Shown in pieces: positions 1-32,718 of a stretch of 64,000 bases of DNA. How positions within the stretch are numbered: the stretch's first letter is position 1; each line of letters starts with the position of its first letter. The stretch covers positions 1-64,000 of IMG/VR virus record IMGVR_UViG_3300028569_002417; one strand, 5' to 3'. The position numbers were made by a program, and so were the translations under genes. A model generated the notes under the pieces. That model saw only the letters and a program-made list of their open reading frames with translations, made no database searches and was not told where the DNA came from.

Positions 1-105
1 GTTGCACCAGCACCAGAAGTTGCACCAGCACCAGAAGTTGCACCAGCACCAGAAGTTGCACCAGCACCAGAAGTTGCACCAGCACCAGAAGTTGCACCAG
101 CATAG
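1..105 (+). CDS. 3' end of a protein with VAPAPE tandem repeats (partial)
   Basis: 18-bp unit gttgcaccagcaccagaa x5 plus a partial copy, in frame, ending at TAG 103-105. Confidence 0.75.
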   Translation, partial: VAPAPEVAPAPEVAPAPEVAPAPEVAPAPEVAPA

Positions 106-1813: not shown

Positions 1814-2227
1814 TTGTCATTATGTGGATATCATGCTGTTGGCACTGAATATCAAGGGACAAGTTTTCCGATGCCTTGGGGTGCAGCGTACATTACTGAA
1901 GAAATAAGGGATTTGAATTTAATGACTAAAACATCTATTTGTGAAAAATGCAAGATTTGGATTTACGATAGAGATTATGATACTGGATGGCAACTTAGGA
2001 TAAGGCTTGGTAATAAACCTCATCATGCATTTAGGCAAATTCAAAATCAAGTGCCAGATTTAGGAAAATACAATACTGGATATTCACAAACATATGTTTA
2101 TGATACAAAAGTTATTGCACATCATCTAAAAGGTGGAAGTCAAATAGAGGGATCTTATACGGAAGAACAAGTGAAAGAAATAAGAGGAAAGTATACAGAA
2201 TGGATTTGGAGTCAGTTGTATGATTAG
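1814..2227 (+). CDS. hypothetical protein
   Basis: 137-aa ORF abutting the previous stop; TTG start uncertain. Confidence 0.6.
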   Translation: MSLCGYHAVGTEYQGTSFPMPWGAAYITEEIRDLNLMTKTSICEKCKIWIYDRDYDTGWQLRIRLGNKPHHAFRQIQNQVPDLGKYNTGYSQTYVYDTKVIAHHLKGGSQIEGSYTEEQVKEIRGKYTEWIWSQLYD

Positions 2228-2406
2228 TAAATCACTTCTGGTTCTTCTTCTTTAATATTCCAACATTTAGAAGAATCAGGAAAACTAACTGGATATCCCA
2301 TTTTCCATTCTAAACTGATTCCAAGTTCATGTCTACCAAAGGCATAATGTGTCATATTTTTGTTCCAGCATTTTTCTTGGCTGATATGATAAATGTTTCT
2401 TGTCAT
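2224..2406 (-). CDS. small hypothetical protein (microprotein array, distal member)
   Basis: 60 aa, ATGA overlap with the upstream gene, two CWN motifs. Confidence 0.5.
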   Translation of the reverse strand: MTRNIYHISQEKCWNKNMTHYAFGRHELGISLEWKMGYPVSFPDSSKCWNIKEEEPEVIY

Positions 2407-2421
2407 GCTGTTTGTTCGCTT
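2393..2421. repeat. 29-bp direct repeat copy 1 (copy 2 at 3226-3254)
   Basis: atgtttcttgtcatgctgtttgttcgctt vs atgtttcttgttatgttgtttgttcgctt, 27/29 identical. Confidence 0.85.
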
Positions 2422-3176
2422 TTTAATTCTTGCAAAAGATTAAAAAGTCTTTGTTGGAATTTACGCCAAAGTGTTGGTTTAGTTTTCCAATGCATCAAAG
2501 CCTCATAATCATTTCTGTTGATTATGCTACTGGTTATATCGTAATTTCCAGTTCTAAGAAATTCTTCTAATACTGATATTATTCTAGATTTATATTGTTC
2601 GTCTGTGTCATAAAATCTAAATTTAATATCAGACAAGATGCCCATTCCATAAGCATCAAATTCTTCTGGTGATTTATAATAAGAAGACACATTTCCCTGT
2701 GAAAAAAATTGTTTTCTTTCTGATGCTTTTTTTGCCCTATTTTCAGGATTTATTATTTGTGGATTAAGTTTTGGGTCGATTGCATGTATTGTTTCGTGAG
2801 ATAGTGCATTAACTATTGGTGGTATTTTTCTTCCGTTAGTATTAATGAAAAAGTTTCTGTTTTCTCTGAATATAATCAGAGATCTAATATTCATAACAAT
2901 TTCATCTGTCTTTGGATTATAATGTGCCATCCAATTATCGCCCAAGTCTTGAAGATAAACTGGAACTGATCTTCTTCCATCTTTTCTTTTAATTTCTCCG
3001 ACAAGAACTTTTTTTATAAAAGTTCTTGTATACAAATCATATAAATCTTCTTCAGAAGACTTTGAAATGACTATTTTCAATATTTTATCAGCGACTAAAT
3101 AAACATCTTCTTGTTGATCTTTATCAAGCTGCATGAACTTGCTTTCATTTATCATCCATTTTTTGAAATTTAACAT
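2403..3176 (-). CDS. HExxH zincin-like metallopeptidase domain protein with capsid-targeting-like N-terminus
   Basis: HETIHAID and downstream YYKSPEEFDAY; N-terminus MLNFKKWMINES; ctaaataatttATG upstream. Confidence 0.7.
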   Translation of the reverse strand: MLNFKKWMINESKFMQLDKDQQEDVYLVADKILKIVISKSSEEDLYDLYTRTFIKKVLVGEIKRKDGRRSVPVYLQDLGDNWMAHYNPKTDEIVMNIRSLIIFRENRNFFINTNGRKIPPIVNALSHETIHAIDPKLNPQIINPENRAKKASERKQFFSQGNVSSYYKSPEEFDAYGMGILSDIKFRFYDTDEQYKSRIISVLEEFLRTGNYDITSSIINRNDYEALMHWKTKPTLWRKFQQRLFNLLQELKSEQTA

Positions 3177-3225
3177 AAATTATTTAGTTTGTTTATTCGT
3201 TTATTTTCCAATGATAGGAAAATGT

Positions 3226-3254
3226 ATGTTTCTTGTTATGTTGTTTGTTCGCTT
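3226..3254. repeat. 29-bp direct repeat copy 2
   Basis: matches 2393-2421. Confidence 0.85.
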
Positions 3255-3442
3255 CTTTTCCAGTGAAGTGAAAATGAATGTCTCTTGGTCCAATGAAGGG
3301 CGCAAGATCTAAACATAGACCAAGAGCAAAACCAACTCATTGACCATGATTTGGATTTTCTATTTTGTCTTATAATAATAGACGTTGACCTATCGCCAGA
3401 CCAGCAATGATTCTCTGATACATTTTCAGTGTGTCTGTGCAT
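3236..3442 (-). CDS. Trp/Ser-rich microprotein
   Basis: 68 aa, CWS and SWSMSWFCSWS motifs. Confidence 0.55.
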   Translation of the reverse strand: MHRHTENVSENHCWSGDRSTSIIIRQNRKSKSWSMSWFCSWSMFRSCALHWTKRHSFSLHWKRSEQTT

Positions 3443-3680
3443 TTTCTTTCCTATCTAAACAACTGCTTTTTGAACTATCTTTCCAGTGAAGAGATATTTT
3501 TACATCATGTATAATTTTCAAATTCCAGTTAGCAGATCTGTTTATATCAAATATATTTGATTCAGAATAATGTAAAACACCATGATCAGATCGACATAAT
3601 GTGTCGAAACTAAACTTAGAAAAAGAAATAAATCCCGTGAAAGGGAAGCATGACGATAAATTATTTCTTTTGAATATCAT
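3426..3680 (-). CDS. small protein of the array (MIFK start)
   Basis: 84 aa, ATGA-coupled, SLHWK motif shared with the neighbour. Confidence 0.55.
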   Translation of the reverse strand: MIFKRNNLSSCFPFTGFISFSKFSFDTLCRSDHGVLHYSESNIFDINRSANWNLKIIHDVKISLHWKDSSKSSCLDRKENAQTH

Positions 3681-3913
3681 GACTTAAAGCTTCTCTGCCA
3701 GACTTTTGAATCGGGATTTTGCTGGTAGGTCCATTCGCACCCTGTTGCTTCGAGCATTACTACATGAGCAATGCTTTCCAATTCTGTCTGATACTGATTG
3801 GCATCATCATATCTTAAGGTGTCTTCGGCTTTTTCAAGAGCCTCATGTCGATCATTTGCAATCACATCAATCGTGTGTGTTTGCGTTGACGTAATCTTAA
3901 CAGTGTACTTCAT
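3677..3913 (-). CDS. DpnD/PcfM-like small protein
   Basis: MKYTVKITSTQTHTIDVIANDRHEALEKAE pattern; GAGGAG SD before ATG at 3913. Confidence 0.55.
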   Translation of the reverse strand: MKYTVKITSTQTHTIDVIANDRHEALEKAEDTLRYDDANQYQTELESIAHVVMLEATGCEWTYQQNPDSKVWQRSFKS

Positions 3914-3924
3914 CTTACTACTCC

Positions 3925-4062
3925 TCAAAAAATCATATCATTCCAAGGATAAGAACCAATTATTCTAAACGATCTGAAATATCCACTATCACATCTGCCA
4001 AAACAACAGATGTATCCTTTGTTCAATCTGCTCAAAGGGAGAGAATTTATTTTGAATATCAT
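3925..4062 (-). CDS. 45-aa microprotein (not in ORF track)
   Basis: hand translation MIFKINSLPLSRLNKGYICCFGRCDSGYFRSFRIIGSYPWNDMIF; ATGA overlap. Confidence 0.55.
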   Translation of the reverse strand: MIFKINSLPLSRLNKGYICCFGRCDSGYFRSFRIIGSYPWNDMIF

Positions 4063-4250
4063 ATTTCGCCACCAAATTTAGACCAAGAATCATCATTGGT
4101 CCAAGACCAAGATTCTGTTCTGGAATTATACCAAGACCAAGACCTAGACTTAGCCCACATGCTCGACCATTGATCATATGGCCTAGACCAAGACCTAGAC
4201 ATAAAACACCAAGATCTACTAGACCTTTCCCAAAATATTTTCAAGATCAT
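4059..4250 (-). CDS. Trp/Ser-rich microprotein
   Basis: 63 aa MILK...SRSWSW...FGGEI. Confidence 0.6.
   Translation of the reverse strand: MILKIFWERSSRSWCFMSRSWSRPYDQWSSMWAKSRSWSWYNSRTESWSWTNDDSWSKFGGEI
4093..4176. repeat. 84-bp repeat copy 1 (copy 2 at 6290-6373)
   Basis: 78/84 identical by hand alignment. Confidence 0.85.
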
Positions 4251-4271
4251 AGATCACCATTAAACTCAGAC

Positions 4272-4445
4272 TTAGAACTTATGCCAAGACCTAGACCAAG
4301 ACCTAGACACAAACATGGACACAGACATAGTGCTAGAATTAGCCCACAGTCTTGACCAAATTGACCAAGACACAGACCAAAACCAAGGTCTAGACCAACA
4401 TCTAGAATAATTATCAACATAAAAAAATCTTTGCGATCTTATCAT
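4272..4445 (-). CDS. Trp/Ser-rich microprotein, 57 aa; FNGDL tail shifted out of frame
   Basis: MIRSQRFFYVDNYSRCWSRPWFWSVSWSIWSRLWANSSTMSVSMFVSRSWSRSWHKF; SKSEFNGDL* lies in another frame. Confidence 0.55.
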   Translation of the reverse strand: MIRSQRFFYVDNYSRCWSRPWFWSVSWSIWSRLWANSSTMSVSMFVSRSWSRSWHKF

Positions 4446-4594
4446 ATTTCACCATTATGATAAACAAGTGAATACCTAAACTCAGAACCAGACCAAGACT
4501 TACACCAAGACACAGACCAAAACTCATACCCAGACCAACATCTAGACACAGACCAAGGGTCAGAATGCTTGCACCCAAATGCTTTTAATGTCAT
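4442..4594 (-). CDS. Trp/Ser-rich microprotein, 50 aa
   Basis: MTLKAFGCKHSDPWSVSRCWSGYEFWSVSWCKSWSGSEFRYSLVYHNGEI; ATGA overlaps at both ends. Confidence 0.6.
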   Translation of the reverse strand: MTLKAFGCKHSDPWSVSRCWSGYEFWSVSWCKSWSGSEFRYSLVYHNGEI

Positions 4595-4773
4595 AATTCA
4601 CCATTAAACAAAAAAGACCTATCTGAAGACAAGGACAAGGACAAAGACCAAGACCAAGACCAAGTCACAGACAAAAACCAAGACCTAGCACCAGACTCAG
4701 ACCAAGAATTAGATCTAGACTTAGATTTAGACCAACATTTAACAATTGAAGAACTATTGGTTTTGATGATCAT
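4591..4773 (-). CDS. Trp/Ser-rich microprotein, 60 aa
   Basis: MIIK...WSWSWSLSLSLSS...FNGEL. Confidence 0.6.
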   Translation of the reverse strand: MIIKTNSSSIVKCWSKSKSRSNSWSESGARSWFLSVTWSWSWSLSLSLSSDRSFLFNGEL

Positions 4774-4892
4774 GTATTATCATACCAATGTTTAGGTCGA
4801 AAACAAGCCATGTTCCAAGACCAAGATCTTGTCCAACGCTGAAGCACAGACCAGCATCTAGATGACCTGTTACGATTGTTTTTGAAGATCAT
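4770..4892 (-). CDS. Trp/Ser-rich microprotein, 40 aa
   Basis: MIFKNNRNRSSRCWSVLQRWTRSWSWNMACFRPKHWYDNT; ATGA overlaps at both ends. Confidence 0.6.
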   Translation of the reverse strand: MIFKNNRNRSSRCWSVLQRWTRSWSWNMACFRPKHWYDNT

Positions 4893-5101
4893 ATTTCACC
4901 ATTAAACAAAGAATTATTAAACCAAGACCAAGACTCATATAAAGACCTAGACCAATTCTCAGAATCAGCCATAGACCGATTCCCACACCTAGAGTAATAA
5001 ACAGACCAAGACCAAGAGTTAGAGCAATAAACAGACCAAGACCAAGAAATAGATCTAGAGTTATGCTTAATGCGATTGTGACCAACTGTTTTGAAAATCA
5101 T
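4889..5101 (-). CDS. Trp/Ser-rich microprotein, 70 aa
   Basis: MIFK...SWSWSVY x2...LFNGEI. Confidence 0.6.
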   Translation of the reverse strand: MIFKTVGHNRIKHNSRSISWSWSVYCSNSWSWSVYYSRCGNRSMADSENWSRSLYESWSWFNNSLFNGEI

Positions 5102-5262
5102 AAATCACCATTAAACAAAGTCATGCAATCTTCTGAGGATTTAACTATGCTCTGTGACCAACATAGAGATTCTCCCCAAGACCACGAATTGTTCCACCAG
5201 ACTGGAGATCCCCACAGATTGTGTGCAAAAGTTCTACAACAACATTCGCCAGTCCTGAACAT
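5098..5262 (-). CDS. Trp/Cys-rich microprotein, 54 aa
   Basis: GAGGA SD; MFRTGECCCRTFAHNLWGSPVWWNNSWSWGESLCWSQSIVKSSEDCMTLFNGDL. Confidence 0.6.
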   Translation of the reverse strand: MFRTGECCCRTFAHNLWGSPVWWNNSWSWGESLCWSQSIVKSSEDCMTLFNGDL

Positions 5263-5282
5263 AGATCGAATCCTCTATGCAA

Positions 5283-5726
5283 CTACCGTAGAAACTTAAC
5301 CCATCTTTGCTTGGGTTCTGTTGGCTGATCCGTTCTATTAATGACCCCGTCATTTCTTTTCCATTGACCACCATTTGTTACTGCTTCCATAATCCAACCA
5401 CTTGCTTTGAGACTGGTGCCCGGTTCGCTTTGTAATATGTAGGTTTGTATTTTGGTGTAACCCATTTCTTTAGCAATCCGAGCGCAGGCACCATACAGTT
5501 TTGAACAAGCGTTAGGTGTGCCATCAGTGCATAGTCTTGCCACTTCAAGAGTTAAACCATCATCTGAAGCACGAGCAACTGGTCTGCCACAAATAGCAAT
5601 CCCCACATAGATATCATCTTTAGTTAAACCTATGCTAAACTTATGTCCAACGCTAGTTTTATGATGTCGATGCCATTGTAAAACAATTTCATTTGCTTTT
5701 TTTAAGACGATAGGAACAATCTTCAT
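5283..5726 (-). CDS. XF1762-family (Mom-related GNAT-fold) protein
   Basis: HRHH..VGHKFSIG, GRPVAR..DDG.TLEV.RLCTDGT.NACS.LY, E.GTSLKASGW. Confidence 0.85.
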   Translation of the reverse strand: MKIVPIVLKKANEIVLQWHRHHKTSVGHKFSIGLTKDDIYVGIAICGRPVARASDDGLTLEVARLCTDGTPNACSKLYGACARIAKEMGYTKIQTYILQSEPGTSLKASGWIMEAVTNGGQWKRNDGVINRTDQPTEPKQRWVKFLR

Positions 5727-5836
5727 TGCAATCCAATCTCTGCTATTTTACAGTATAATTAGGTCATTCCCTGCGTAAACTGTATTGATATAGTCCTTGC
5801 GAGTCTTTTTCTCAAAGACTATTTGTGTGTTCATCG

Positions 5837-6223
5837 TCACCACCAGCTACTATAAAAAACATAAAGACCATCACCTATTGCTCTTTTAGACTGATAGATG
5901 AAATCAATATCATTTTCAATCGATTTACTATCAGGAGGATTATCGCCAAAGAAAAAACCTTCTGTGTTAGGAAGATTACCTCCTCTGATATCTTTTTCTA
6001 AATCTTCCAAATCTTCTAGCGTAAGCACAACATAATCACAATTGAACTCTCCTGTCCCACCTTTTTTATAATAAAGTTTTTTCATCCATCCATGAAGATC
6101 ATGATGCTTTCTCCAGTAAAATAATTGATTTTTATCGAGTCCTTCCACAAAGACTGGATTTGTGTCTTTCAGTTCAACAACATCTTCTTTTTTTACTGAA
6201 TAAACAAACATGTCAAGTCCCAT
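5837..6223 (-). CDS. conserved phage protein (MGLDM family)
   Basis: MGLDMF...YWRKHHDLHGWM...FNC...GFFFG...YSSWW pattern; AGGAG SD. Confidence 0.8.
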   Translation of the reverse strand: MGLDMFVYSVKKEDVVELKDTNPVFVEGLDKNQLFYWRKHHDLHGWMKKLYYKKGGTGEFNCDYVVLTLEDLEDLEKDIRGGNLPNTEGFFFGDNPPDSKSIENDIDFIYQSKRAIGDGLYVFYSSWW

Positions 6224-6279
6224 AAGACACTCCTATATGCCTGACCAAAACATAGACCAACTCCAAGGCATGGACCTAT

Positions 6280-6492
6280 TTAATCGTTTTCATTGTTCCA
6301 AGACCAAGACTCAGTTCTAGAATTATACCAAGACCAAGACCTAGACATAGCCCACATGTTCGACCATTGATCAACACGAATCCACCATGTGGAACGAACA
6401 TGCCTGTATCCATCAATAGTGCGCCAATTAAACATCATATCAAATCTAGACCATTCTCTAGATTTATTATGCGTATTTGCTCTAAGAATCAT
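6280..6492 (-). CDS. Trp/Ser-rich microprotein (paralog of 4059-4250)
   Basis: likely start MILRANTH; shares DQWS.MWA.SRSWSWYNSRTESWSW. Confidence 0.6.
   Translation of the reverse strand: MILRANTHNKSREWSRFDMMFNWRTIDGYRHVRSTWWIRVDQWSNMWAMSRSWSWYNSRTESWSWNNEND
6290..6373. repeat. 84-bp repeat copy 2
   Basis: matches 4093-4176. Confidence 0.85.
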
Positions 6493-6586
6493 AATGATTC
6501 CAACTGGTAAATCACTCAAAGCGAAAAATGTCACAGCCCTGAATTTCATCGAAATCAGAACTATGACATTACATTAAACCAAGAAA

Positions 6587-6820
6587 TTATTTAGACCTTA
6601 TCTTCTTTTTCTGCTGATTCTGAGGATATCTGGATTGCTGAACGCTTTGCGATGAGTACTTAGGCGATTGCGGTCTTTGTTGAATATATCTGCTGCCAAC
6701 AGATTGCTGATTGCTTCTTGAACTAGCCGACCGGCTAGATGTGGAAGATGGTCATGTTGGGCAATTAGGACTTGACTGTGTCATAACCAAAATACTTGCT
6801 AAAAAACTTAAATTCAACAT
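6587..6820 (-). CDS. candidate secreted selenoprotein, 77 aa, CxxU motif (in-frame UGA at codon 23)
   Basis: AAGGAG SD; MLNLSFLASILVMTQSSPNCPT-UGA then 54 open codons to TAA; SECIS-like hairpin after the UGA. Confidence 0.7.
6723..6751 (-). promoter_or_regulatory. bacterial-type SECIS element (candidate)
   Basis: UGA + 13 nt + CUAGCC-GGUC-GGCUAG perfect hairpin; loop and spacing resemble E. coli fdhF SECIS. Confidence 0.7.
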
Positions 6821-6851
6821 TGTAAACTCCTTATCATGGTGACCCGACATT

Positions 6852-6880
6852 ATCATAATCGGGGGAAAATAAACTTGCAA
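6852..6880 (-). promoter_or_regulatory. sigma70-type promoter
   Basis: TTGCAA-17 nt-TATGAT upstream of the ATG at 6820. Confidence 0.65.
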
Positions 6881-6911
6881 CTAGATTCCAGCCATTTACC
6901 AAAGAAAATAA

Positions 6912-7871
6912 TTAAGCTTGTGCTGTTCTTTGACCGCCAGCATCATTTCTAACAACGGTATTGATATGGTCAGCCATAAATCTGATAAAATTATGTAATT
7001 TAGATTTATCATTATTATTATAATAATGTAAATAAACTTGCCTCAAGTCTTGTACATCCACACTATAATTTTCTGGATTCATTATCAAATCCTTGAGAGC
7101 CTCACCAAAATTTTCTTTCGTCAATATCTCACCTGTTTTCTTGTACCAATTGCGCTTTAGTTCACCCAAACGAACACCAATTTCGGCACTATCAGTGAGA
7201 TATTTTAAGCCGGGATCGTCATTAGAAAGACTCGACTGAAACAACATGTTTTGAGTTGAATGAGATAATTCGTGACGCAAAGTTCTCAAATTTGAACGAT
7301 TATTTACAACACAAAACTTTTGACCACCGGGTATTGAAGTGCAAAAACCTGTACTACCCGGTTCGGCACCGGGATACTTATTTGGGTCCATAAAAACAAC
7401 TGGAATAGGTTTGTCTAATTCACTAGTTCTCATGTCGGCAGCAGAAGGGATTCTGGGCGCTTCAAAGTCACCAATTTTATCAGGAGAATCATAAGCCTTG
7501 GCTGACATGTCACGCACTTTTTCGTAATCTTTTCCATATTCAGGAGAAATAGCTTCACTTGGTCTTATCATCTGAACATCATTGAAATTGATGTCCAATC
7601 CAGTTTTATTTTTGATGTGATCAATAACAGATTGAATAACTGGACTTGTTGCAGACCTGACAATTGCTGGTTTCGGTGCCAAATCTACATCCATACGCTT
7701 AGGAGACGCACTACCCAATGCCAAAGCCGCACCAATACCTCCAATAATTCTTCTGACCCTGCCACTCATATCCTTGAAGAATTCGTCGTATTGAACCTCT
7801 GTCAGCATTTGAGAGAAAAGTTCAGGATCACGATTCTCAAGAAATTTAACGAATGTAAGATTAGTTTGCAT
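6912..7871 (-). CDS. HExxH metallopeptidase-like protein with capsid-targeting-like N-terminus
   Basis: TLRHELSHSTQ, downstream E in YLTDSAEIG; gtaaatattttcATG upstream; N-terminal hydrophobic segment. Confidence 0.65.
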   Translation of the reverse strand: MQTNLTFVKFLENRDPELFSQMLTEVQYDEFFKDMSGRVRRIIGGIGAALALGSASPKRMDVDLAPKPAIVRSATSPVIQSVIDHIKNKTGLDINFNDVQMIRPSEAISPEYGKDYEKVRDMSAKAYDSPDKIGDFEAPRIPSAADMRTSELDKPIPVVFMDPNKYPGAEPGSTGFCTSIPGGQKFCVVNNRSNLRTLRHELSHSTQNMLFQSSLSNDDPGLKYLTDSAEIGVRLGELKRNWYKKTGEILTKENFGEALKDLIMNPENYSVDVQDLRQVYLHYYNNNDKSKLHNFIRFMADHINTVVRNDAGGQRTAQA

Positions 7872-7886
7872 GAAAATATTTACATG

Positions 7887-8402
7887 TCAAGCAGCATAAA
7901 TTTCCAGAAATTTGTTTATATCTGCAAGAAGATTAATATTTTGCTCTACTTTTTCTTTTTCCCAATTCCACCATTCTATTTTCAGTAATTGATCTATTAC
8001 ATTTTTTTCAAATCTGTATCTAATTATTTTTGCAGGATTTCCTGCAACTATAGAAAAAGGCGGCACATCTTTAGTTATAACTGCCCTAGCACCAACTATA
8101 GAACCATGACCTATAGTCACGCCTCCAAATATCATTGCTTCAGTTCCAATCAAACAATCAGAACCAATTATGATTGGACCCCTGTCCTTTCCTATTGGAT
8201 AATTGGAATTAGGATAATGTGATCTAAATCTGAAAGTGCTTACAGTAGGATGATGCATACAAGCATGATCTATCGGTCCACCACACAAGAATGTCACTCT
8301 CCTAGCTATTCCTGAATAATTTCCAACAGTTATCTGGTAATTAGGGAAATGCATAATACAGTCTGGCGCAATACTCGAAAGAGTACCAAGAGTTATTCCC
8401 AT
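7887..8402 (-). CDS. CatB/xenobiotic-type hexapeptide O-acetyltransferase
   Basis: hexapeptide repeats, VITKDVPPFSIVAGNPAKIIRYRF, LLKIEWWNW; start uncertain. Confidence 0.85.
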   Translation of the reverse strand: MGITLGTLSSIAPDCIMHFPNYQITVGNYSGIARRVTFLCGGPIDHACMHHPTVSTFRFRSHYPNSNYPIGKDRGPIIIGSDCLIGTEAMIFGGVTIGHGSIVGARAVITKDVPPFSIVAGNPAKIIRYRFEKNVIDQLLKIEWWNWEKEKVEQNINLLADINKFLEIYAA

Positions 8403-8614
8403 GACTCACTCTCAAAAGAGAATTCTTCAAAAGGAAATATTTTTTCTTCAATGAAACAATGACAAAAAACTGAATTCATGTCAAATGTTCCACACAAAAT
8501 AATTCTTTGTGACCAACCTCTAGAATAACAAAAATCATTCCAATTTGAATGATATAAATCTTTCTTAAAAAGAAAGATTGACCAAAAATTATTTGCAGAA
8601 CCAATGGTTTTCAT
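8393..8614 (-). CDS. aromatic/Cys-rich microprotein
   Basis: MKTIGSANNFWS...WNDFCYSRGWS, similar to neighbours. Confidence 0.5.
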   Translation of the reverse strand: MKTIGSANNFWSIFLFKKDLYHSNWNDFCYSRGWSQRIILCGTFDMNSVFCHCFIEEKIFPFEEFSFESESWE

Positions 8615-8707
8615 GTGTATCCCGCCTAACAACTGCAAAATAAAATTCTGCCCCTATTATATCATAAAAAAAACGAAAATCAACAGTTTTATAATATGAT
8701 TGGGGCT

Positions 8708-8872
8708 TCATTGATCGAAAGACCAACAAGCAGAAAAAATGTAACCACGATGGTGTTCAGATATAATGGTAAATCCAGAGAAAGAACAATCGTCATTCCA
8801 TGACCTAGAAACTGGTTTGGTCAAAGACCAACAACAATTATTGTTGTAGTCAGAATTTGCCCTGAGAATCAT
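8708..8872 (-). CDS. Trp/Cys/Ser-rich microprotein, 54 aa (not in track)
   Basis: MILRANSDYNNNCCWSLTKPVSRSWNDDCSFSGFTIISEHHRGYIFSACWSFDQ; GGAG SD. Confidence 0.65.
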   Translation of the reverse strand: MILRANSDYNNNCCWSLTKPVSRSWNDDCSFSGFTIISEHHRGYIFSACWSFDQ

Positions 8873-8889
8873 TTATAAACTCCATATGA

Positions 8890-9051
8890 TCATTCGTTGT
8901 AAGACCAACACGAACAACAAATGTGACCATTCTGAACAGAGAAAATTGTAAATCCAGAGTAAGAGCAATAATTGTTCCATGATCTGGAAACCGATATATC
9001 TCCAGACCAACACCAGTTGGTGTGATTGTAAGAATTTTCTCTAAGAATCAT
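8890..9051 (-). CDS. Trp/Cys/Ser-rich microprotein, 53 aa, tandem paralog of 8708-8872
   Basis: MILRENSYNHTNWCWSGDISVSRSWNNYCSYSGFTIFSVQNGHICCSCWSYNE. Confidence 0.65.
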   Translation of the reverse strand: MILRENSYNHTNWCWSGDISVSRSWNNYCSYSGFTIFSVQNGHICCSCWSYNE

Positions 9052-9067
9052 TAATATTACTCAATTT

Positions 9068-9583
9068 TCAATATTTGGATCGCACCAAGTCAATCTCTGG
9101 GCGAAAATCTCTTCCACCGTAATCCTCTGGTCTTTTTCCCAATTTCTCTATACTCCAATAAACCTGATCGATCTTTTTATCATACCAAGTATCTTCTCTT
9201 CTAAGATTTCTCAAGAATAACCCTTGATCAGGTCTATTACCAGTGTGACGATTAACTGCACTCAATTTATTTGGATGTATTTTTTCCACAAGCAAATTAT
9301 ATAATGTTATAATACTGAATTGAAAATCTAACATCTTTCTTGCATCACGATTTGCATAAAAAAATAAAGACTGCACAATTTTATCACGCTGCATAGCCTC
9401 CCAATCCCAAGGCAAACTAGCAAAAGACTTTACATAATTTTTTGAAAATCCCTCTCCTTCATCACTCTCATTCAGCCATTCTGCAAAAGAAAATTTATTT
9501 TCTTTAACGCAATTTGGAACTGTTCTACCACCTTTCTTTTTCATTCCTATTTGCTTATAGCCTTTCCAACAAGCCTCATTCAT
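9068..9583 (-). CDS. putative virion protein with CWKGY..VPNCV module
   Basis: first ~40 aa nearly identical to 23602-24000; SFAEWLNES motif. Confidence 0.75.
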   Translation of the reverse strand: MNEACWKGYKQIGMKKKGGRTVPNCVKENKFSFAEWLNESDEGEGFSKNYVKSFASLPWDWEAMQRDKIVQSLFFYANRDARKMLDFQFSIITLYNLLVEKIHPNKLSAVNRHTGNRPDQGLFLRNLRREDTWYDKKIDQVYWSIEKLGKRPEDYGGRDFRPEIDLVRSKY

Positions 9584-9634
9584 GATTTTTACTCACTGAC
9601 ATAAAATACTGGAATTTGTTCCTCTTATCAAAAA

Positions 9635-10831
9635 TCACGGTGCCCATTTAGAATACCTCTCGTCTTTGTGTATCTGCCAATTAGTATTAGGACTAGTCTC
9701 ATGTGTGAATTTATATGGCAATGAAAAACCAAATATTTTTTCCATAGCAGAAGAATAAGAAGAACCATCAATAGCGTCAGAAAATAATTTCTTCCTCTGT
9801 TCTTGAGGTAAATTTTTAGCCCAATTATAATAATCTTCCTGAAAATCCAAATACTTCGACTTATATTTTTGATGATCATTAGCATCATCCACAATCTTAT
9901 GAATATTATTTCTTATAAGTTCTATCTTTTCTAAAACATTTTTATAATTTTCTCTCGTACTCTTATAACGCTTAAAAAATGCATCATTTTCCACAGATTT
10001 CTTCCACTCATCAAAATTCATAGTTGCTACTACATCACTTGTTGTAACAGAATCATATGACCTATAACCCCTTTCATCTGAACTCAAATATTCACCACCA
10101 GTATCGTGAACAGTCTTTTCAATCTGCTCAATAACTATATCGTCAATGGCTTCATATCCAGAAAAAGGATCATATAAATTAGGAATCTTCTTCACAAAAC
10201 TTGTTCTGTATTCTTTGGGGGATATCTTAAATTCATAAGAAATATACTTAGAAGGATTCTCTGGAGCCTTTTCGTCTGGAGGAACCATCACCTCGCCCGG
10301 ATACTTAGGAATCTCAATTTCACCAGACCTAATTTTAGCAATAGTATCTTCAAAAGATACAGAACTTTTCATTTTAGTTACAGCACTTTTAACATAATAA
10401 TTGATGTCTAGTCCTGACCTCCCTGTCTCTACCTTCTCCTCTTTACCTTTATAACGCAAAAATACAGCATTCTTGTCTACCCTATACTCAAAATCATGAG
10501 GAATCAAATTGTGCAAATCCCTGCAACCAGCGCAAACACCGGGATCAACTATTATAGCACCACTATTCTCATCGGTAGGCTTAGTGTCAAACTTGAAAAT
10601 ACATTCCTGATCATGCATTAAACAACATTGACCTTCCTTGCCTCTCTCAGGTAATGCTATTTTATAAATACGGGCAATTTTACCAATTATACCTCTCCTG
10701 CCTTCACTCCAACTAACCTTCACCTTCTGACCCCGCTGCAAATCATGCTCCAATAATTTTTCATATGCACTCTCATTCAAAACACCAGCTAACTTCAAAA
10801 TTTCATATTTTTCTTTCATGATATACTCCAT
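9635..10831 (-). CDS. hypothetical protein with LAGVLNE motif
   Basis: 398-aa ORF, TATATA motif upstream. Confidence 0.75.
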   Translation of the reverse strand: MEYIMKEKYEILKLAGVLNESAYEKLLEHDLQRGQKVKVSWSEGRRGIIGKIARIYKIALPERGKEGQCCLMHDQECIFKFDTKPTDENSGAIIVDPGVCAGCRDLHNLIPHDFEYRVDKNAVFLRYKGKEEKVETGRSGLDINYYVKSAVTKMKSSVSFEDTIAKIRSGEIEIPKYPGEVMVPPDEKAPENPSKYISYEFKISPKEYRTSFVKKIPNLYDPFSGYEAIDDIVIEQIEKTVHDTGGEYLSSDERGYRSYDSVTTSDVVATMNFDEWKKSVENDAFFKRYKSTRENYKNVLEKIELIRNNIHKIVDDANDHQKYKSKYLDFQEDYYNWAKNLPQEQRKKLFSDAIDGSSYSSAMEKIFGFSLPYKFTHETSPNTNWQIHKDERYSKWAP

Positions 10832-10854
10832 AAAACTATAATCCTATATATCCC

Positions 10855-11187
10855 TTATTCAAACTTTGTAACATATCCGCATCCAAGCTTTTCATATAAA
10901 TTCCGACACCATTTAATTACTTCTTCAGGCAGCAAATCTTTACTCATAGTAACTATGAAATGCTGATCATCAGAATCCCTAAAGTATCCATCGAAACTAT
11001 ATCCATCAGAAATGATTCTTTCTGGTGTGCTGTATTTACTGGTTCTCCAGAATTTAATAATAACAGAAAACTTTCTACCAATACTATCTTTTTCTGAATA
11101 ACTCCAACATTTATCGTGTTTGTTATTCAAATGATCATATGTTTTCTCAGCTTTGAATCCAGCAGAGATAATGTCTTGCTCTGTCAT
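10855..11187 (-). CDS. hypothetical protein
   Basis: 110 aa, ATGA-coupled. Confidence 0.65.
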   Translation of the reverse strand: MTEQDIISAGFKAEKTYDHLNNKHDKCWSYSEKDSIGRKFSVIIKFWRTSKYSTPERIISDGYSFDGYFRDSDDQHFIVTMSKDLLPEEVIKWCRNLYEKLGCGYVTKFE

Positions 11188-11423
11188 GATGGCACCAACA
11201 CCTTGTTAAAAAAAACTTCATCAACCTTATTGGTAAATATTTCATGGGACCATTGATCATTAGCAGAAAAACATTGTGATCTGATTACCCAAGATCTTCT
11301 GAAAAATCTGCTTGAATCATGATACGATGTAAATGCACAGCTACTTGCATGTCTGTTTACTTGAGCAACAGCTTCTGTCGTCCAGATAGAATGTTTCGGT
11401 GTATTCGCACTAAAATTGATCAT
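11184..11423 (-). CDS. small Ser/Trp-containing protein
   Basis: likely start MINFSANT; RSW and DQWS motifs like the array members. Confidence 0.45.
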   Translation of the reverse strand: MINFSANTPKHSIWTTEAVAQVNRHASSCAFTSYHDSSRFFRRSWVIRSQCFSANDQWSHEIFTNKVDEVFFNKVLVPS

Positions 11424-11493
11424 GTCATGATGGTACTTCAGTTTTAGTTGATTGTAAAGTAAAATTTCATGGTTGTTGTTGACTAAATAATTT

Positions 11494-12291
11494 ATGAATG
11501 AATTCAAGTTTTGGCTCAATCTACAAGAAGGTCTGGCTCTCAAAGGTGGGTTCAAAGGAAGCTGGTTCCAAAGATTAGTAGCAGCGATGTATGTCTTATC
11601 GCCTGAATCAGAGCCAGAAGCAGTTCAACTTTACATGGGTCCAGATGGTTTGACTGCGGCGATTAGTCATCAGTTCAATCAATTACAGAGCAAGTACACA
11701 CATGTTTTGAGTAGATCTGATCCTTTCAAAAGCAGTAAAGAATTGGCTCGTCATATTGATGATCAGAAGAAAGTTGGTATTCGTCGTCCTTCTGTTCCTT
11801 CTTATGATGCTGATTTGGGTCCGAATATTAAACTGGGTGAGAAGGGTCATCCTGTTTGGACTAAAGATCAAGACCAGCGTTTTGGTTGGGTTCACGACCT
11901 TATGACTCACTATGCTGGTAAGTTGCCTTTTGATGCTCGTGGAGAGGCGAGAGCATATTTGAAACATTTGAAAACATTATCTCCTCATTTAGCGCCAATA
12001 TTATTCACAGAAATTATAGCTCAAACATCATACTATTACATTTACGGAGACTTTCCCAAACAAAAAACTGTCATACTTAAAGACTTTGATTACTTTGATG
12101 TTGGAAAACTTGCACCTCAATCTAAACTAAACAATTTTTTTGCATTCAAAAACAAGGAACTTGTTCCTAAAAAAGAACTCAGTTTAGATGAACTGGAATC
12201 AGTTCACCCTCTACTTCCAAATATACTTAGAAATCAGGAATCTAGATGGCAAAATATCGATAGACCAAAACACAATTTAGCTGGAACTTGA
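11494..12291 (+). CDS. putative internal virion protein, zincin-like HDxxxH...GE domain
   Basis: MNEFKFWLNLQE leader; WVHDLMTH...RGEARAY..H; ctaaataatttATG. Confidence 0.65.
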   Translation: MNEFKFWLNLQEGLALKGGFKGSWFQRLVAAMYVLSPESEPEAVQLYMGPDGLTAAISHQFNQLQSKYTHVLSRSDPFKSSKELARHIDDQKKVGIRRPSVPSYDADLGPNIKLGEKGHPVWTKDQDQRFGWVHDLMTHYAGKLPFDARGEARAYLKHLKTLSPHLAPILFTEIIAQTSYYYIYGDFPKQKTVILKDFDYFDVGKLAPQSKLNNFFAFKNKELVPKKELSLDELESVHPLLPNILRNQESRWQNIDRPKHNLAGT

Positions 12292-12360
12292 CTGTTGTTT
12301 CTATAAATAATTTGAATAATTTTTTAAGATTATGCACCTTATATTTGGTAAAATAGAAGC

Positions 12361-13065
12361 TCATAATTTAATTATTTTTTTATTTGGCAAATAGGATTTA
12401 TCAAAAATTAAGTTAGCTAGATAGTAAATTTCATCATCAAATAATTTCATAAATTTTGGATTATCAATAAAATATTTATATCTTTGCATAACATTCATTT
12501 GTTGAGCTTTGCCGTCAAATTTTCTATTATCAAAACTACTTCCATATCCATAATCTAAAACTTGATTTATAGATACATCTGAATATTCTACTCCCATAAT
12601 TTCAGCCATTTTCTGTCTATAATTTTTATCTAAAAACCAATAGTCGAAGCAAAATATATTTTCTTTTTTTTCTATAAACATTTTAGCGTATGATTTCCAA
12701 TAAGACAAAGTTTTTAGTGAATTATTTTCATTATCAATTGTTTCTATTGACATTGAACTTTTTATTCTACTTGCCATCATATTAAAAGGATTCCTAAAAA
12801 CATAGAATGGCTCACACTGAACTCCTTCAACAAAATTTTCAAATTTTTTATTTGAAAAATTATATTCTTCAATATTACAAAAAAAGGCATCACAATTTTG
12901 CATATTTTCTATAATATGTTCTGAAATATTTATATTTTTAACATCCCAGTTTTGACTTGCTATATTGTTAACTAATTTTGTAGATCCTTTTACATTTGAT
13001 TGAAACCAATTCATAATTGCATGATGTCCAGATCTTCTCAAGCTATAAAAACATATTTTTCTCAT
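12361..13065 (-). CDS. sulfotransferase-like P-loop protein
   Basis: SLRRSGHHAIMNW, FRNPFNMMASR, GYGSSFD. Confidence 0.65.
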   Translation of the reverse strand: MRKICFYSLRRSGHHAIMNWFQSNVKGSTKLVNNIASQNWDVKNINISEHIIENMQNCDAFFCNIEEYNFSNKKFENFVEGVQCEPFYVFRNPFNMMASRIKSSMSIETIDNENNSLKTLSYWKSYAKMFIEKKENIFCFDYWFLDKNYRQKMAEIMGVEYSDVSINQVLDYGYGSSFDNRKFDGKAQQMNVMQRYKYFIDNPKFMKLFDDEIYYLANLIFDKSYLPNKKIIKL

Positions 13066-13066
13066 A

Positions 13067-13690
13067 TTATTTCATCTTAATTTTATAGGCATTAATTTTA
13101 TTTATCATTTTGTCTAAACAACTGAAAAATTCAATTTGTGGTGTATCAGGGTAAAATCTATCTACTTTATATTCTTCTTTGTGTATTACAAAACAGGTAG
13201 TGTTAGTCATCATTGCTAGATGTGTAACCCCACTGTCGATACCGACATAAATATGACTGGCACATATTTTTTCAAATTTATCTATGATGCTAAGACCGGA
13301 CTTTTCCCCCAAATCAATGGCATCAGGAAATTTTAATTCAAACTTTTTCTTATCATTAATTTTTAATTCTTTATTTTCACGATTTGAGCGAGCGTCGAAT
13401 TGATATGAAATTAAATTTTTTTTATTTATAATAATATGAGGCTTAATATATGGCTCTTTGATCCACGATACGTTAGAATTATTCCAACTTGGGAAAACAA
13501 TATTTGAATTTTTATTATTGTTGCTTAGTTTTATAGGTAGTTTTAATATTGTTAGCAAATCACTAACAGTTTTTTCAACTGAATTTCCACAACATGGACA
13601 ATAATCACTCGTAAAAATTTCATCAAATTTTAATCTTTGAATTATATTTATCAGATCGCCCAAGTGTTTGTGGTGTGTGGTTATTTTCAT
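13067..13690 (-). CDS. glycosyltransferase family 9-like protein
   Basis: LGD near N-terminus, YVGIDSGVTHLA. Confidence 0.7.
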   Translation of the reverse strand: MKITTHHKHLGDLINIIQRLKFDEIFTSDYCPCCGNSVEKTVSDLLTILKLPIKLSNNNKNSNIVFPSWNNSNVSWIKEPYIKPHIIINKKNLISYQFDARSNRENKELKINDKKKFELKFPDAIDLGEKSGLSIIDKFEKICASHIYVGIDSGVTHLAMMTNTTCFVIHKEEYKVDRFYPDTPQIEFFSCLDKMINKINAYKIKMK

Positions 13691-14292: not shown

Positions 14293-14312
14293 AAGGGTCC
14301 TATAAATAATTT

Positions 14313-32286: not shown

Positions 32287-32296
32287 AAGGCAAAAT

Positions 32297-32716: not shown

Positions 32717-32718
32717 TT

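What the first reader, a model, noticed from the sequence alone, without database searches (positions are those of the whole stretch)
3236..5262. Translationally coupled array of Trp/Ser/Cys-rich microproteins
Seen: ten 40-84-aa minus-strand ORFs (5098-5262, 4889-5101, 4770-4892, 4591-4773, 4442-4594, 4272-4445, 4059-4250, 3925-4062, 3426-3680, 3236-3442), half absent from the track. Most are chained by ATGA overlaps, begin MI(F/L/I)K-like and are built from SWS/SRS/CWS units (TCTTGG-type hexamers). The copies are highly divergent yet keep composition and coupling. Inference: a rapidly diversifying, stoichiometrically expressed microprotein family. It could encode RS-like RNA-binding or condensate peptides, anti-defence inhibitors, or precursors for post-translational modification; an XF1762 GNAT-fold gene lies directly upstream in the same transcript. 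I know of no described function.
Basis: partly seen in the sequence, partly recalled or inferred. Interest (0 to 1): 0.8.

Follow-up and report, generated by a model that had tools for sequence, protein, structure and literature searches.

The report
Coupled Trp/Ser-rich phage microprotein array
A freshwater jumbo phage carries a chain of real, back-to-back small genes for tryptophan/serine-rich proteins; they appear to have grown from a six-base repeat, are reshuffled between related phages, have no relatives elsewhere, and their function is unknown.

Summary
In detail: all ten minus-strand ORFs exist, and most are chained by ATGA stop/start overlaps. The TCTTGG repeat also leaves a second (LGLG) frame open, but comparison with relatives settles the frame. 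In the annotated frame dN/dS is 0.09-0.28, as in control genes. Substitutions by codon position pool to 22/21/56. The other two frames give about 1 or more. These are real genes, not a satellite.

Each unit has two parts. One is a conserved translation-coupling junction (SD-like GGTGA or GGAGG plus an [A/G]TGA overlap), kept in 33 of 33 junctions. The other is an (S-X)n core with X mostly W/R/K. Trp is 11.7% of residues versus 1.5% in long genes, and Trp and Cys are the best-conserved residues.

Unit content and order differ in at least seven related freshwater phage contigs, and two chimeras are proven at the DNA level. A profile search of 1.84 billion proteins finds only this clade. There is no Pfam, PHROG, PDB or Rfam match and no confident fold. 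The XF1762/Mom-like neighbour is real but not a constant partner.

Function is unknown. My best guess is small basic polyanion-binding accessory proteins.

The parts
5283..5726 (-). XF1762-family / Mom-like GNAT-fold gene directly upstream. It is context, not a constant partner of the array.
   Evidence: NCBIfam NF045478 8.3e-55, above the cutoff; phrog_1384 7e-38. It is absent at this position in L062, L068 and L082.
5098..5262 (-). Unit 1: 54 aa, acidic (pI 4.9), 5 Cys. It is the first unit of the array in every relative.
   Evidence: Against L002: omega 0.25, substitutions by codon position 7/7/16.
4889..5101 (-). Unit 2: 70 aa, basic, (S-W)n core, MIFK start, ends in the FNGEI*/ATGA junction.
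   Evidence: A diverged counterpart is present in L082.
4770..4892 (-). Unit 3: 40 aa, pI 11.4.
   Evidence: Against L002: omega 0.10, substitutions 5/0/6, no indels.
4591..4773 (-). Unit 4: 60 aa. It contains the longest hexamer tract of the array.
   Evidence: (period-6 repeat at 4640-4707).
4442..4594 (-). Unit 5: 50 aa, MTLK start.
   Evidence: Orthologs in L062, L082 and L147. Its 3' part is reused in the L081 chimera.
4247..4445 (-). Unit 6. The annotated ORF is 4272-4445. One extra T at 4276/4277 truncates the protein and puts the ancestral tail and ATGA junction (to 4247) out of frame.
   Evidence: the window has AAGTTCTAAG where L081 and L082 have AAG-TCTAAG. The intact 65-aa orthologs end in a normal ATGA junction.
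4059..4250 (-). Unit 7: 63 aa, 10 Trp.
   Evidence: Against L002: omega 0.19 and one 12-nt (two-hexamer) indel. It is the donor of both chimeras.
3925..4062 (-). Unit 8: 45 aa, MIFK start, less Trp-rich. It is the last unit before the 78-aa gene.
   Evidence: Orthologs in L062 and L082; those two differ by 2/1/5 substitutions by codon position.
3677..3913 (-). Ordinary 78-aa gene embedded in the chain (GAGGAG SD; its stop overlaps the unit 10 start).
   Evidence: Omega 0.13-0.57 across four genomes. No family match above threshold.
3426..3680 (-). Unit 10: 84 aa, MIFKRNN start, Ser/Phe/Cys-rich.
   Evidence: For the L002-L062 orthologs: omega 0.09, substitutions 3/3/14.
3236..3442 (-). Unit 11: 68 aa, basic. 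All six Trp and two Cys are invariant across six homologues.
   Evidence: Alignment A3. Omega 0.28-0.5. A 97%-identical protein exists in ENA.
3189..3235 (-). Remnant of the 3' end of a deleted second unit-11 paralogue. The paralogue is intact in L058 at 698-892.
   Evidence: 52-bp repeat at 3189-3287; L058 layout; alignment A5 read by eye.
2224..2406 (-). Unit T: 60 aa, the most conserved member, with two CW motifs. It closes the array in all relatives. In the window a 257-aa gene (2403-3176) is inserted before it.
   Evidence: Omega 0.04-0.14, substitutions 1/2/14.
6280..6549 (-). Outlying member upstream of the 128-aa gene. It is a chimera: the 5' half of the 'up' gene joined to the 3' half of unit 7.
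   Evidence: blastn: nt 57-171 match the L064 'up' gene at 84%; nt 176-260 match unit 7 at 93-100%.
5097..5112 (-). Coupling junction 1/2 (AATGGTGA-NN-TATGAT: SD-like GGTGA plus ATGA overlap).
4888..4903 (-). Coupling junction 2/3.
4590..4605 (-). Coupling junction 4/5.
4441..4456 (-). Coupling junction 5/6.
4246..4261 (-). Junction 6/7. The sequence is intact but is uncoupled in the window by the upstream +1 T.

Best explanation
SHOWN. The region is a polycistronic block of genuine small protein genes (40-85 aa) belonging to one lineage-restricted family of a freshwater jumbo-phage clade.

Each unit has two parts:
- A portable translation-initiation junction. It consists of an SD-like GGTGA or GGAGG encoded in the last codons of the preceding unit, a 4-nt [A/G]TGA stop/start overlap, and an A/T-rich MI(F/L)K start, with a CW motif near residue 13.
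- A core that is essentially (Ser-X)n, with X mostly Trp, Arg or Lys. Its codon usage is that of an expanded TCT-TGG hexamer.

Orthologous units are under purifying selection, and Trp and Cys are the most conserved residues. The array as a whole turns over fast. Units are gained, lost, reordered, fused into chimeras and resized in frame, by recombination at or near the junctions and within the hexamer tracts.

INFERRED. The units are co-transcribed and translated by termination-reinitiation. Any new or shuffled unit would therefore be expressed as soon as it lands behind a junction.

The products are mostly basic (pI 9-11.6), with no confident predicted fold. Their strict two-residue periodicity would, in an extended conformation, give one all-Ser face and one aromatic-cationic (W/R/K) face.

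My best guess at the activity is binding of a polyanionic host target (nucleic acid or envelope polymer) by accessory host-takeover or counter-defence factors. These would be dispensable individually and useful in particular hosts.

The confidence given is for the whole statement: about 0.9 for the shown part and about 0.25 for the proposed activity.
For: Coding frame:
- Omega is 0.09-0.28 in the ORF frame for well-aligned ortholog pairs, against about 1 or more in both other frames. Control genes give Mom 0.22 and p78 0.13-0.57.
- Substitutions by codon position in five independent pairs pool to 22/21/56. My arithmetic gives chi-square 24 and p about 6e-6.
- All 13 ortholog groups show a third-position excess.
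- Net length differences between orthologs are multiples of 3 (12, 42, 18, 9, 3).

Coupling:
- 33 of 33 unique junctions keep the [A/G]TGA overlap.
- 29 of 33 have an SD-like motif at -17 to -4, against 11% of random sites.

Residue constraint: Trp is 97% and Cys 94% identical in aligned orthologs, other residues 61-85%. All six Trp are invariant in the unit-11 family.

Periodicity: 83% of W-W spacings are even, with 0 of 2000 shuffles reaching this. R/K fall in phase with W 187 times and out of phase 68 times.

Repeat origin: Ser is encoded by TCT 72% of the time versus 30% in long genes, and TCTTGG/TGGTCT are the top in-frame dicodons.

Turnover: at least seven different layouts occur in relatives. 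Two chimeras are proven at the DNA level. There is a two-hexamer indel, a frameshifted unit and a paralogue remnant.

Restriction to one clade: a profile search of 1.84e9 proteins finds 4 hits, all from this clade. There is nothing in GenBank phages. Relatives whose 128-aa neighbour is 53% identical or less lack the family.

Charge.
Against: - No expression evidence of any kind.
- AF2 gives no confident structure (pLDDT 54 and 47), so the two-faced strand picture is only a reading of the periodicity. That periodicity could equally be a passive legacy of hexamer expansion.
- The binding target and the host-takeover role rest on composition, charge and location in a variable region next to a DNA-modification gene. 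Nothing ties any unit to a target.
- Unit 1 is acidic in most genomes, and units 8 and 10 are not Trp-rich, so the family is not uniform.
- One unit is frameshifted in the window, which shows that individual units can decay.
Confidence: 0.6

Rival explanations
1. Gene nursery. The units are translated, but most are young, nearly function-free proto-genes. They are continually spawned by hexamer expansion behind a coupling junction and are tolerated rather than used.
For: - The family occurs in one narrow clade only.
- Ser codon usage has not equilibrated: TCT 72% versus 30%.
- Neither unit modelled has a confident predicted fold.
- Gain and loss are frequent, one unit is frameshifted and one paralogue is reduced to a remnant.
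Against: - Omega of 0.1-0.3 and 97% Trp conservation between orthologs are as strong as in ordinary neighbouring genes.
- Units 1, 10, 11 and T are retained in nearly all relatives.
Confidence: 0.17
2. RiPP-type precursor peptides. A short conserved N-terminal recognition sequence is followed by variable Ser/Cys/Trp-rich cores that are modified post-translationally, for example by cross-linking or glycosylation, by phage or host enzymes.
For: - Many tandem small genes share an N-terminal motif (M-I-x-K ... C-W) ahead of variable cores rich in modifiable residues.
- The window also encodes an S8 subtilase, a trypsin-like peptidase, a PhyH dioxygenase, a COOH-NH2 ligase and several glycosyltransferases.
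Against: - No radical-SAM, YcaO, lanthionine-synthetase or similar family appears among the hits in the window or next to the array in any relative. Only 25 of the 33 families found were displayed.
- The candidate enzymes are tens of kb away and are not shown to co-vary with the array.
- The conserved N-terminus is only about 14 residues and partly reflects the translation-initiation region.
- The conserved C-termini are dictated by the next gene's SD.
Confidence: 0.07
3. Non-coding degenerate hexamer satellite, or structured RNA, in which the ORFs are accidental because the strand is A-poor.
For: - The A-poor strand keeps two frames open.
- Period-6 repeats are detected.
- The array RNA folds better than shuffles, z = -4.9.
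Against: - Frame-specific purifying selection and a third-position excess are seen in every ortholog group.
- Indels are in multiples of three.
- The stop/start overlap is conserved in 33 of 33 junctions.
- An ordinary neighbouring gene has a comparable folding z-score of -3.4.
- There is no Rfam match.
Confidence: 0.03
4. The real products are the overlapping LGLG-frame ORFs, which would be small hydrophobic glycine-zipper membrane peptides. The Trp/Ser frame would be the artefact, or both frames would be used.
For: LGLG-frame ORFs of 54-73 aa span units 2, 5, 6 and 7 in the window and also occur in L062, L081 and L082.
Against: - Omega is about 1-4.9 in that frame.
- These ORFs have no SD-like motif and use scattered TTG or ATG starts.
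- They are not chained.
- Their openness is explained by the lack of A on this strand.
Confidence: 0.03

Closest known systems
Hyperplastic regions of T4-type phages, shuffled through PeSL cassettes (Arbiol et al. 2010, PMC2839356; PMC4122927)
   Same: Closely related phages differ by insertion, deletion and replacement of small non-essential ORFan genes. Recombination between short conserved sequences that flank each gene drives the shuffling.
   Different: PeSLs are transcriptional cassettes (an early promoter plus a stem-loop terminator) between unrelated genes. Here the conserved junction is translational (SD plus ATGA overlap) and lies inside coding sequence. No promoter or terminator enrichment is seen, and the shuffled genes are paralogues of one low-complexity family.
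'ORFanage' block of cyanophage S-PM2 (Puxty et al. 2015, PMC4503421)
   Same: A contiguous block of lineage-specific ORFans in a large aquatic phage. In that paper the block is dispensable in the laboratory and is proposed to be useful in particular environments.
   Different: From the abstract alone, that block is not described as a repeat-derived paralogous family with conserved coupling junctions. No sequence similarity to any deposited phage was found here.
In-frame tandem repeats that create disordered protein regions in Borg elements (PMC9879509)
   Same: Short nucleotide tandem repeats inside ORFs expand in frame, evolve fast and generate low-complexity peptide segments that are retained.
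   Different: The Borg repeats sit in archaeal extrachromosomal elements and mostly in larger proteins. Here a hexamer builds the bulk of whole microproteins, and the products are Trp-rich, which is atypical for disordered regions.
Trp-Arg ladder modules: the WSXWS motif of cytokine receptors and thrombospondin type-1 repeats (from my own knowledge)
   Same: Strings such as W-S-x-W-S, a module size of about 50-70 aa, a W/S/R/C-rich composition, and W and R in the same structural phase.
   Different: No match to any Pfam family, TSP_1 included, at E up to 5. No PDB sequence match. No conserved six-Cys pattern. No confident fold. The comparison modules are eukaryotic and extracellular.
Multi-copy RiPP precursor families with a conserved leader and a hypervariable core, e.g. 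prochlorosin-type lanthipeptides (from my own knowledge)
   Same: Many small paralogous genes with a conserved N-terminus and variable Ser/Cys-rich cores.
   Different: No maturase is linked to the array. The conserved N-terminal part is very short. The cores of orthologs are under purifying selection.
Trp/Arg-rich cationic peptides such as indolicidin, tritrpticin and the puroindoline Trp domain (from my own knowledge)
   Same: Cationic, Trp-rich and without a stable globular fold; they bind membranes and nucleic acids.
   Different: Those peptides are 13-25 residues long, secreted and Ser-poor. The phage units are 40-85 aa, 20% Ser, and have no signal peptide evident in their N-termini.

Membership tests
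Protein-coding gene (versus satellite) | Purifying selection specific to one reading frame | tested here: met
   Omega is 0.09-0.28 in the ORF frame and about 1 or more in the other two. Substitutions by codon position pool to 22/21/56. All 13 ortholog groups agree.
Protein-coding gene (versus satellite) | Indels between orthologs preserve the frame | tested here: met
   Net length differences are 12, 42, 18, 9 and 3 nt. The single exception is the +1 T that truncates unit 6 in the window.
Protein-coding gene (versus satellite) | Transcript, ribosome footprint or peptide evidence | not testable with these tools
Translationally coupled operon (termination-reinitiation) | Stop codon of the upstream gene overlaps or abuts the start codon of the downstream gene | tested here: met
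   33 of 33 unique junctions across 7 loci have the [A/G]TGA overlap.
Translationally coupled operon (termination-reinitiation) | Ribosome-binding site embedded in the end of the upstream ORF | tested here: met
   29 of 33 junctions have an SD-like motif at -17 to -4, against 11% of random 14-mers.
Translationally coupled operon (termination-reinitiation) | Downstream translation depends on upstream translation | not testable with these tools
   Needs reporter fusions carrying premature stops.
PeSL-type mobile regulatory cassettes | The cassette contains a sigma-70-like early promoter and a stem-loop terminator | tested here: not met
   Promoter-like and terminator-like sites in 2000-8000 are no more frequent than in shuffles, and none marks the junctions systematically.
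PeSL-type mobile regulatory cassettes | Recombination between repeated short cassettes shuffles small ORFan genes among close relatives | tested here: met
   At least seven layouts, with junctions always intact. Chimeras are shown.
RiPP biosynthetic locus | A maturase (radical SAM, YcaO, lanthionine synthetase, cyclase etc.) encoded with the precursors | tested here: not met
   No such family among the hits for genes flanking the array, for other large ORFs of the window, or in relatives' contexts. Eight of the 33 families were not displayed.
RiPP biosynthetic locus | Conserved leader followed by a variable core | tested here: inconclusive
   An N-terminal motif of about 14 residues, M-I-x-K ... 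C-W, is shared. It overlaps the translation-initiation region and is much shorter than typical leaders.
Thrombospondin type-1 / WSXWS Trp-Arg ladder | Sequence match to the family profile | tested here: not met
   No Pfam family at E up to 5 for nine units. The PDB profile searches are empty or insignificant.
Thrombospondin type-1 / WSXWS Trp-Arg ladder | Three-stranded fold with stacked Trp and Arg layers | tested here: inconclusive
   AF2 on unit 11 gives three strands, but at pLDDT 47. Unit 7 gives no secondary structure at pLDDT 54. W and R/K do share the same two-residue phase.
Thrombospondin type-1 / WSXWS Trp-Arg ladder | Conserved disulfide-forming Cys pattern | tested here: not met
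   Most units have 1-3 Cys, with no common pattern beyond the N-terminal CW.
XF1762 / Mom-like family (the neighbouring gene only) | Score above the curated family cutoff | tested here: met
   NF045478 scores 184.6 bits against a cutoff of 50; phrog_1384 7e-38. Pfam Mom scores 20.5, below its cutoff of 27.1.
Known defence-system components | Match to a PADLOC model | tested here: not met
   No hit at E up to 0.1 for ten proteins of the locus. That library covers defence proteins, not anti-defence proteins.

The most novel reading that the evidence does not exclude
The array is a self-renewing peptide library. A portable translation-coupling junction plus a slippage-prone TCT-TGG hexamer lets the phage mint, express and recombine new two-faced Trp/Arg-ladder beta-peptides. 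Selection then keeps those that bind particular host targets, for example defence proteins or nucleic acids, or that serve as substrates of the phage's own glycosylation or modification enzymes. This would be a microsatellite-driven route to new functional phage genes, and a previously undescribed Trp-ladder microprotein class.
Probability: 0.15. Interest if true: 0.8.

Novelty: new variant of a known kind. Interest (0 to 1): 0.55.

Why it matters
Variable blocks of small orphan genes are where large phages keep much of their unexplored host-interaction repertoire, and how such genes arise is an open question.

This locus gives an unusually legible case:
- The raw material (a hexamer repeat) can be read directly from the sequence.
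- So can the expression device, a conserved stop/start coupling junction that travels with every unit.
- So can the turnover mechanism: junction and repeat recombination, with chimeras caught in the act.
- The products are nevertheless under ordinary purifying selection, with Trp as the constrained residue.

A 12%-Trp, strictly two-residue-periodic microprotein family has no described counterpart in the libraries and literature searched here. If the units bind defined host targets, they would be a new class of phage effectors. They would also offer a compact natural scaffold for aromatic-cationic recognition. If they do nothing, they document proto-gene birth in a virus.

Tried and rejected
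Searches that found nothing:
- Megablast of the locus, and tblastn of unit 11 and of the 319-aa neighbour, against GenBank phages.
- tblastn of the 128-aa neighbour found only a 38% match, in Limnohabitans phage DC31.
- Word-indexed homology search with unit 11: one 97%-identical protein only.
- Exhaustive profile search with the core alignment: four hits, all from the same clade.
- ESM Atlas for units 7 and 11: chance-level scores of 0.64 and 0.82, no structure search possible.
- Pfam, PHROGs, NCBIfam and PADLOC on the units: nothing.
- PDB profile searches: nothing meaningful.
- Rfam at E up to 1 and a tRNA scan: nothing.

Structure and RNA:
- AF2 on units 7 and 11 was low confidence. I therefore did not run fold search, whose matches would have been meaningless.
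- RNA folding z-scores do not separate the array from an ordinary gene.

Wider scans:
- A junction-motif scan of IMG/VR gave multiple hits only in the window's own contig. The 52 single hits are chance.
- The metagenome scan found only more members of the same clade.

Literature: searches found no description of Trp-Ser repeat phage proteins. The hits for SWSWS/WSWSW strings appear, from their titles, to be unrelated uses such as degenerate DNA code.

Ideas considered and rejected:
- Alternative genetic code with TGA read as Trp. Long standard-code ORFs cover the window, and the p78 gene ends at a conserved TGA.
- Plus-strand PRPR/QDQD ORFs. They are short and have no support.
- A fixed Mom-array functional unit. 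Mom is absent from several arrays.

Full report
**Observation.** Read on the minus strand, they are chained by four-base ATGA stop/start overlaps at 5098-5101, 4889-4892, 4770-4773, 4591-4594, 4442-4445, 4059-4062 and 3677-3680.

The TCNTGG-type hexamers that give the Ser-Trp strings are confined to 4001-5250, with a second patch at 6251-6500. Tandem Repeats Finder sees degenerate period-6/12/24/30 arrays there.

In the core units Trp is 11.7% and Ser 21.3% of residues, against 1.5% and 6.6% in long genes of the same window.

- An ordinary 78-aa gene (3677-3913) lies inside the chain.
- Two further family members lie at 6280-6549 and 2224-2406.
- The A-poor strand also leaves a second frame open, which reads LGLGLG and gives 54-71-aa ORFs over units 2, 5, 6 and 7. 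Which frame is used, if any, therefore had to be decided by comparison with relatives.

**Source and relatives.** The window is the first 64 kb of IMG/VR contig UViG_3300028569_002417 (225.5 kb; JGI Ga0247843_1000055). Nothing similar is in the GenBank phage collection. The 128-aa neighbour has only a 38% match, in a freshwater Limnohabitans phage.

I used flanking and embedded genes as anchors and recovered a graded set of relatives:
- L002/L061/L064.
- L058/L060.
- L062.
- L065-L069 and L076.
- ENA lake-metagenome contigs L081-L085, on contigs of up to 194 and 340 kb.
- JGI freshwater contigs L140-L154.

This is therefore a freshwater jumbo-phage clade. Relatives in which the 128-aa protein is 53% identical or less, and Mom-like homologues at 90% identity or less in other phages, have no such ORFs.

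**Which frame is constrained.** For orthologous units I counted substitutions by codon position and computed Nei-Gojobori dN/dS in all three frames, with the Mom-like and 78-aa genes as controls.

| Comparison | omega in ORF frame |
|---|---|
| Unit 1 | 0.25 |
| Unit 3 | 0.10 |
| Unit 7 | 0.19 |
| Unit 10 (L002-L062) | 0.09 |
| Unit 11 (L002-L058) | 0.28 |
| Unit T | 0.04-0.14 |
| Control, Mom-like | 0.22 |
| Control, p78 | 0.13-0.57 |

In the two other frames, including LGLG, omega is about 1 to 4.9. Substitutions in five independent pairs pool to 22/21/56 for codon positions 1/2/3. By my arithmetic this is chi-square 24, p about 6e-6.

With more relatives, all 13 ortholog groups show the third-position excess. 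Net length differences between orthologs are multiples of three. These are protein-coding genes in the Trp/Ser frame.

**Rival readings tested against the sequence.**
- The LGLG ORFs have no SD-like motif and are not chained.
- There is no Rfam or tRNA match.
- The array RNA's folding z-score (-4.9) is not distinctive next to an ordinary gene (-3.4).

**Anatomy of a unit.** Across 33 non-redundant junctions from seven loci, every one keeps the [A/G]TGA overlap. An SD-like motif lies at -17 to -4 in 29 of them, against 11% of random positions.

The conserved C-termini are simply the next gene's ribosome-binding site read as protein. FNGEI* encodes GGTGA-N4-ATGA. In L062, SWRKSI* encodes GGAGG.

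The N-termini (MI[F/L/I]K, then CW near residue 13) are shared by most units, including 11 and T.

The cores are strictly two-residue periodic:
- 83% of adjacent W-W spacings are even, against 47% expected; 0 of 2000 shuffles reach this.
- Ser is the usual neighbour of Trp.
- Arg and Lys fall in phase with Trp 187 times and out of phase 68 times.

The cores are thus (S-X)n with X mostly W, R or K. Ser is TCT 72% of the time (30% in long genes), and TCTTGG/TGGTCT are by far the commonest in-frame dicodons. This points to expansion of a TCT-TGG hexamer followed by point mutation.

Most units are basic (pI 9-11.6, net +3 to +9). Unit 1 is acidic in most genomes. In aligned orthologs Trp is 97% and Cys 94% conserved, other residues 61-85%. 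In the unit-11 family all six Trp are invariant.

**Turnover.** Array layouts differ among relatives.

| Locus | Order of units |
|---|---|
| Window | 1-2-3-4-5-6-7-8-p78-10-11-(257-aa gene)-T |
| L002 | 1-3-7-d-e-p78-10-11-T |
| L062 | 1-d-f-5-g-8-p78-10-11-T |
| L068 | 1-3'-d-p78-10-11-T |
| L082 | 1-6-5-2'-8-x-e-11-T |
| L081 | Mom-1-(7/5 chimera)-6-5 |
| L147 | Mom-1-7'-x-5a-5b-x-e-11 |

L145 differs again. Unit 1 always opens the array, and units 10, 11 and T close it. The middle is a variable cassette zone.

Specific events:
- Two chimeras are proven at the DNA level. Window 6280-6549 joins an 'up' gene 5' half (84% to L064) to a unit-7 3' half (93-100%). L081 5001-5147 joins unit 7 (92%) to unit 5 (94%).
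- Unit 7 differs from its L002 ortholog by a two-hexamer indel.
- The window's unit 6 has one extra T relative to L081 and L082. This truncates it and explains the only uncoupled gap. It may be a real frameshift or an assembly error in a TT run.
- The 52-bp repeat at 3189-3287 is the remnant of a second unit-11 paralogue, which is intact in L058.
- The upstream XF1762/Mom-like gene is real but is missing at this position in L062, L068 and L082. It is therefore not a fixed partner.

**What the proteins are.** A profile of 14 core units searched against 1.84 billion representative proteins found four hits, all from this clade. The word-indexed search with unit 11 found one 97%-identical protein.

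No unit matches Pfam (E up to 5), PHROGs, NCBIfam, PADLOC or any PDB sequence. The ESM Atlas returns chance-level scores.

AF2 gives pLDDT 54 with no secondary structure for unit 7, and pLDDT 47 with three strands for unit 11. That is too weak to search folds.

No radical-SAM, YcaO or lanthionine-synthetase family appears beside the array in the window or in relatives. The window does encode many sugar-modification enzymes, an S8 subtilase, a trypsin-like peptidase, a PhyH dioxygenase and a COOH-NH2 ligase, but these lie at a distance.

**How it most likely works.**

Shown:
- A block of genuine small genes.
- A conserved coupling junction at every boundary.
- A repeat-derived periodic core.
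- Purifying selection on orthologs.
- Fast recombinational turnover.
- Restriction to one clade.

Inferred:
- The block is co-transcribed, since no promoter or terminator enrichment is seen.
- It is translated by termination-reinitiation, so any unit landing behind a junction is expressed.
- The products are basic, poorly folded or extended peptides. Their Trp/Arg/Lys face would bind a polyanionic host target.
- They act as individually dispensable accessory host-takeover or counter-defence factors, as expected for a hyperplastic region next to a DNA-modification gene.

I put about 0.9 on the shown part and about 0.25 on the proposed activity. Rivals are a gene nursery of nearly functionless proto-genes (0.17), RiPP-type or otherwise modified precursors (0.07), a non-coding satellite (0.03) and LGLG-frame membrane peptides (0.03).

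**Comparison with what is known.** The closest described phenomenon is modular shuffling of small ORFan genes in T4-type hyperplastic regions through PeSL cassettes (PMC2839356, PMC4122927), together with the S-PM2 'ORFanage' (PMC4503421). Here, however, the repeated cassette is translational, not a promoter-terminator unit, and the shuffled genes are paralogues.

The in-frame repeat origin recalls Borg tandem repeats (PMC9879509). The resemblances to WSXWS/thrombospondin Trp-Arg ladders, RiPP precursor families and Trp/Arg-rich cationic peptides come from my own knowledge. They fail, or remain inconclusive, on every membership feature I could test.

Literature searches found no prior description of Trp-Ser repeat phage proteins.

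**Limits.** The host is unknown. Only partial contigs exist for most relatives. The selection statistics rest on few, short and partly non-independent comparisons. The structural reading of the periodicity is not supported by a confident model.

Noticed in passing
window 1-102: A perfect 18-bp tandem repeat (5.7 copies, 100% identity) sits exactly at the start of the window, which is also the end of the contig. It could be a repeat-induced assembly break or part of a repetitive gene (VAPAPE-type repeat in one frame).
   Followed up: no
window 45360-45694, inside the 415-aa ORF 44858-46105 (-): Nested tandem repeats of period 6/24/51/81 (TCTTCG-type, up to 97% identity) inside a long ORF. This is a second case of in-frame repeat expansion in this phage; on the coding strand it would give an acidic Asp/Glu-rich repetitive protein.
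   Followed up: no
window 27729-27842, inside the 488-aa ORF 27564-29030 (-), and 24236-24310: Trinucleotide (AGC)n and (GGA)n tracts lie within or next to ORFs, so low-complexity coding repeats are common in this genome.
   Followed up: no
window 2403-3176 (-): This 257-aa gene of unknown function is a presence/absence polymorphism. It is present in the window and L058, between unit 11 and unit T, and absent in L002 and L062. Its N-terminus (MLNFKKW) resembles the MIFK-type starts of the array units.
   Followed up: partly
window 7887-16000 and 32000-48923: There is a dense set of sugar and envelope-type modification genes: hexapeptide acyltransferase, WbqC-like, sulfotransferase-like, GH130, a TPR-GT9 glycosyltransferase, GT8, epimerase/dehydratase and a DegT aminotransferase. 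The window also encodes an S8 subtilase, a LAGLIDADG endonuclease, Prim-Pol, an LRR protein and a MotA/ExbB-like protein.
   Followed up: partly
L081 3879-4265: The 128-aa gene in this relative has a Lys/Gln-rich patch (QKKKQKKKKK) where all other relatives read HHDLHGWMK. It looks like a local double frameshift or an assembly error in an A-rich run.
   Followed up: no
L062 7414-7590, L145 5989-6165, L147 5496-5672: Another small basic Trp/Cys-containing ORF (58 aa, ending ...CRCWSKNI) lies downstream of the methyltransferase gene in several relatives. It is possibly a further, more distant member of the family outside the main array.
   Followed up: no
window 3677-3913 (-): The embedded 78-aa gene has a weak, sub-threshold resemblance to DpnD/PcfM-like proteins (E = 0.02). 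In L068 its C-terminal third is replaced.
   Followed up: no
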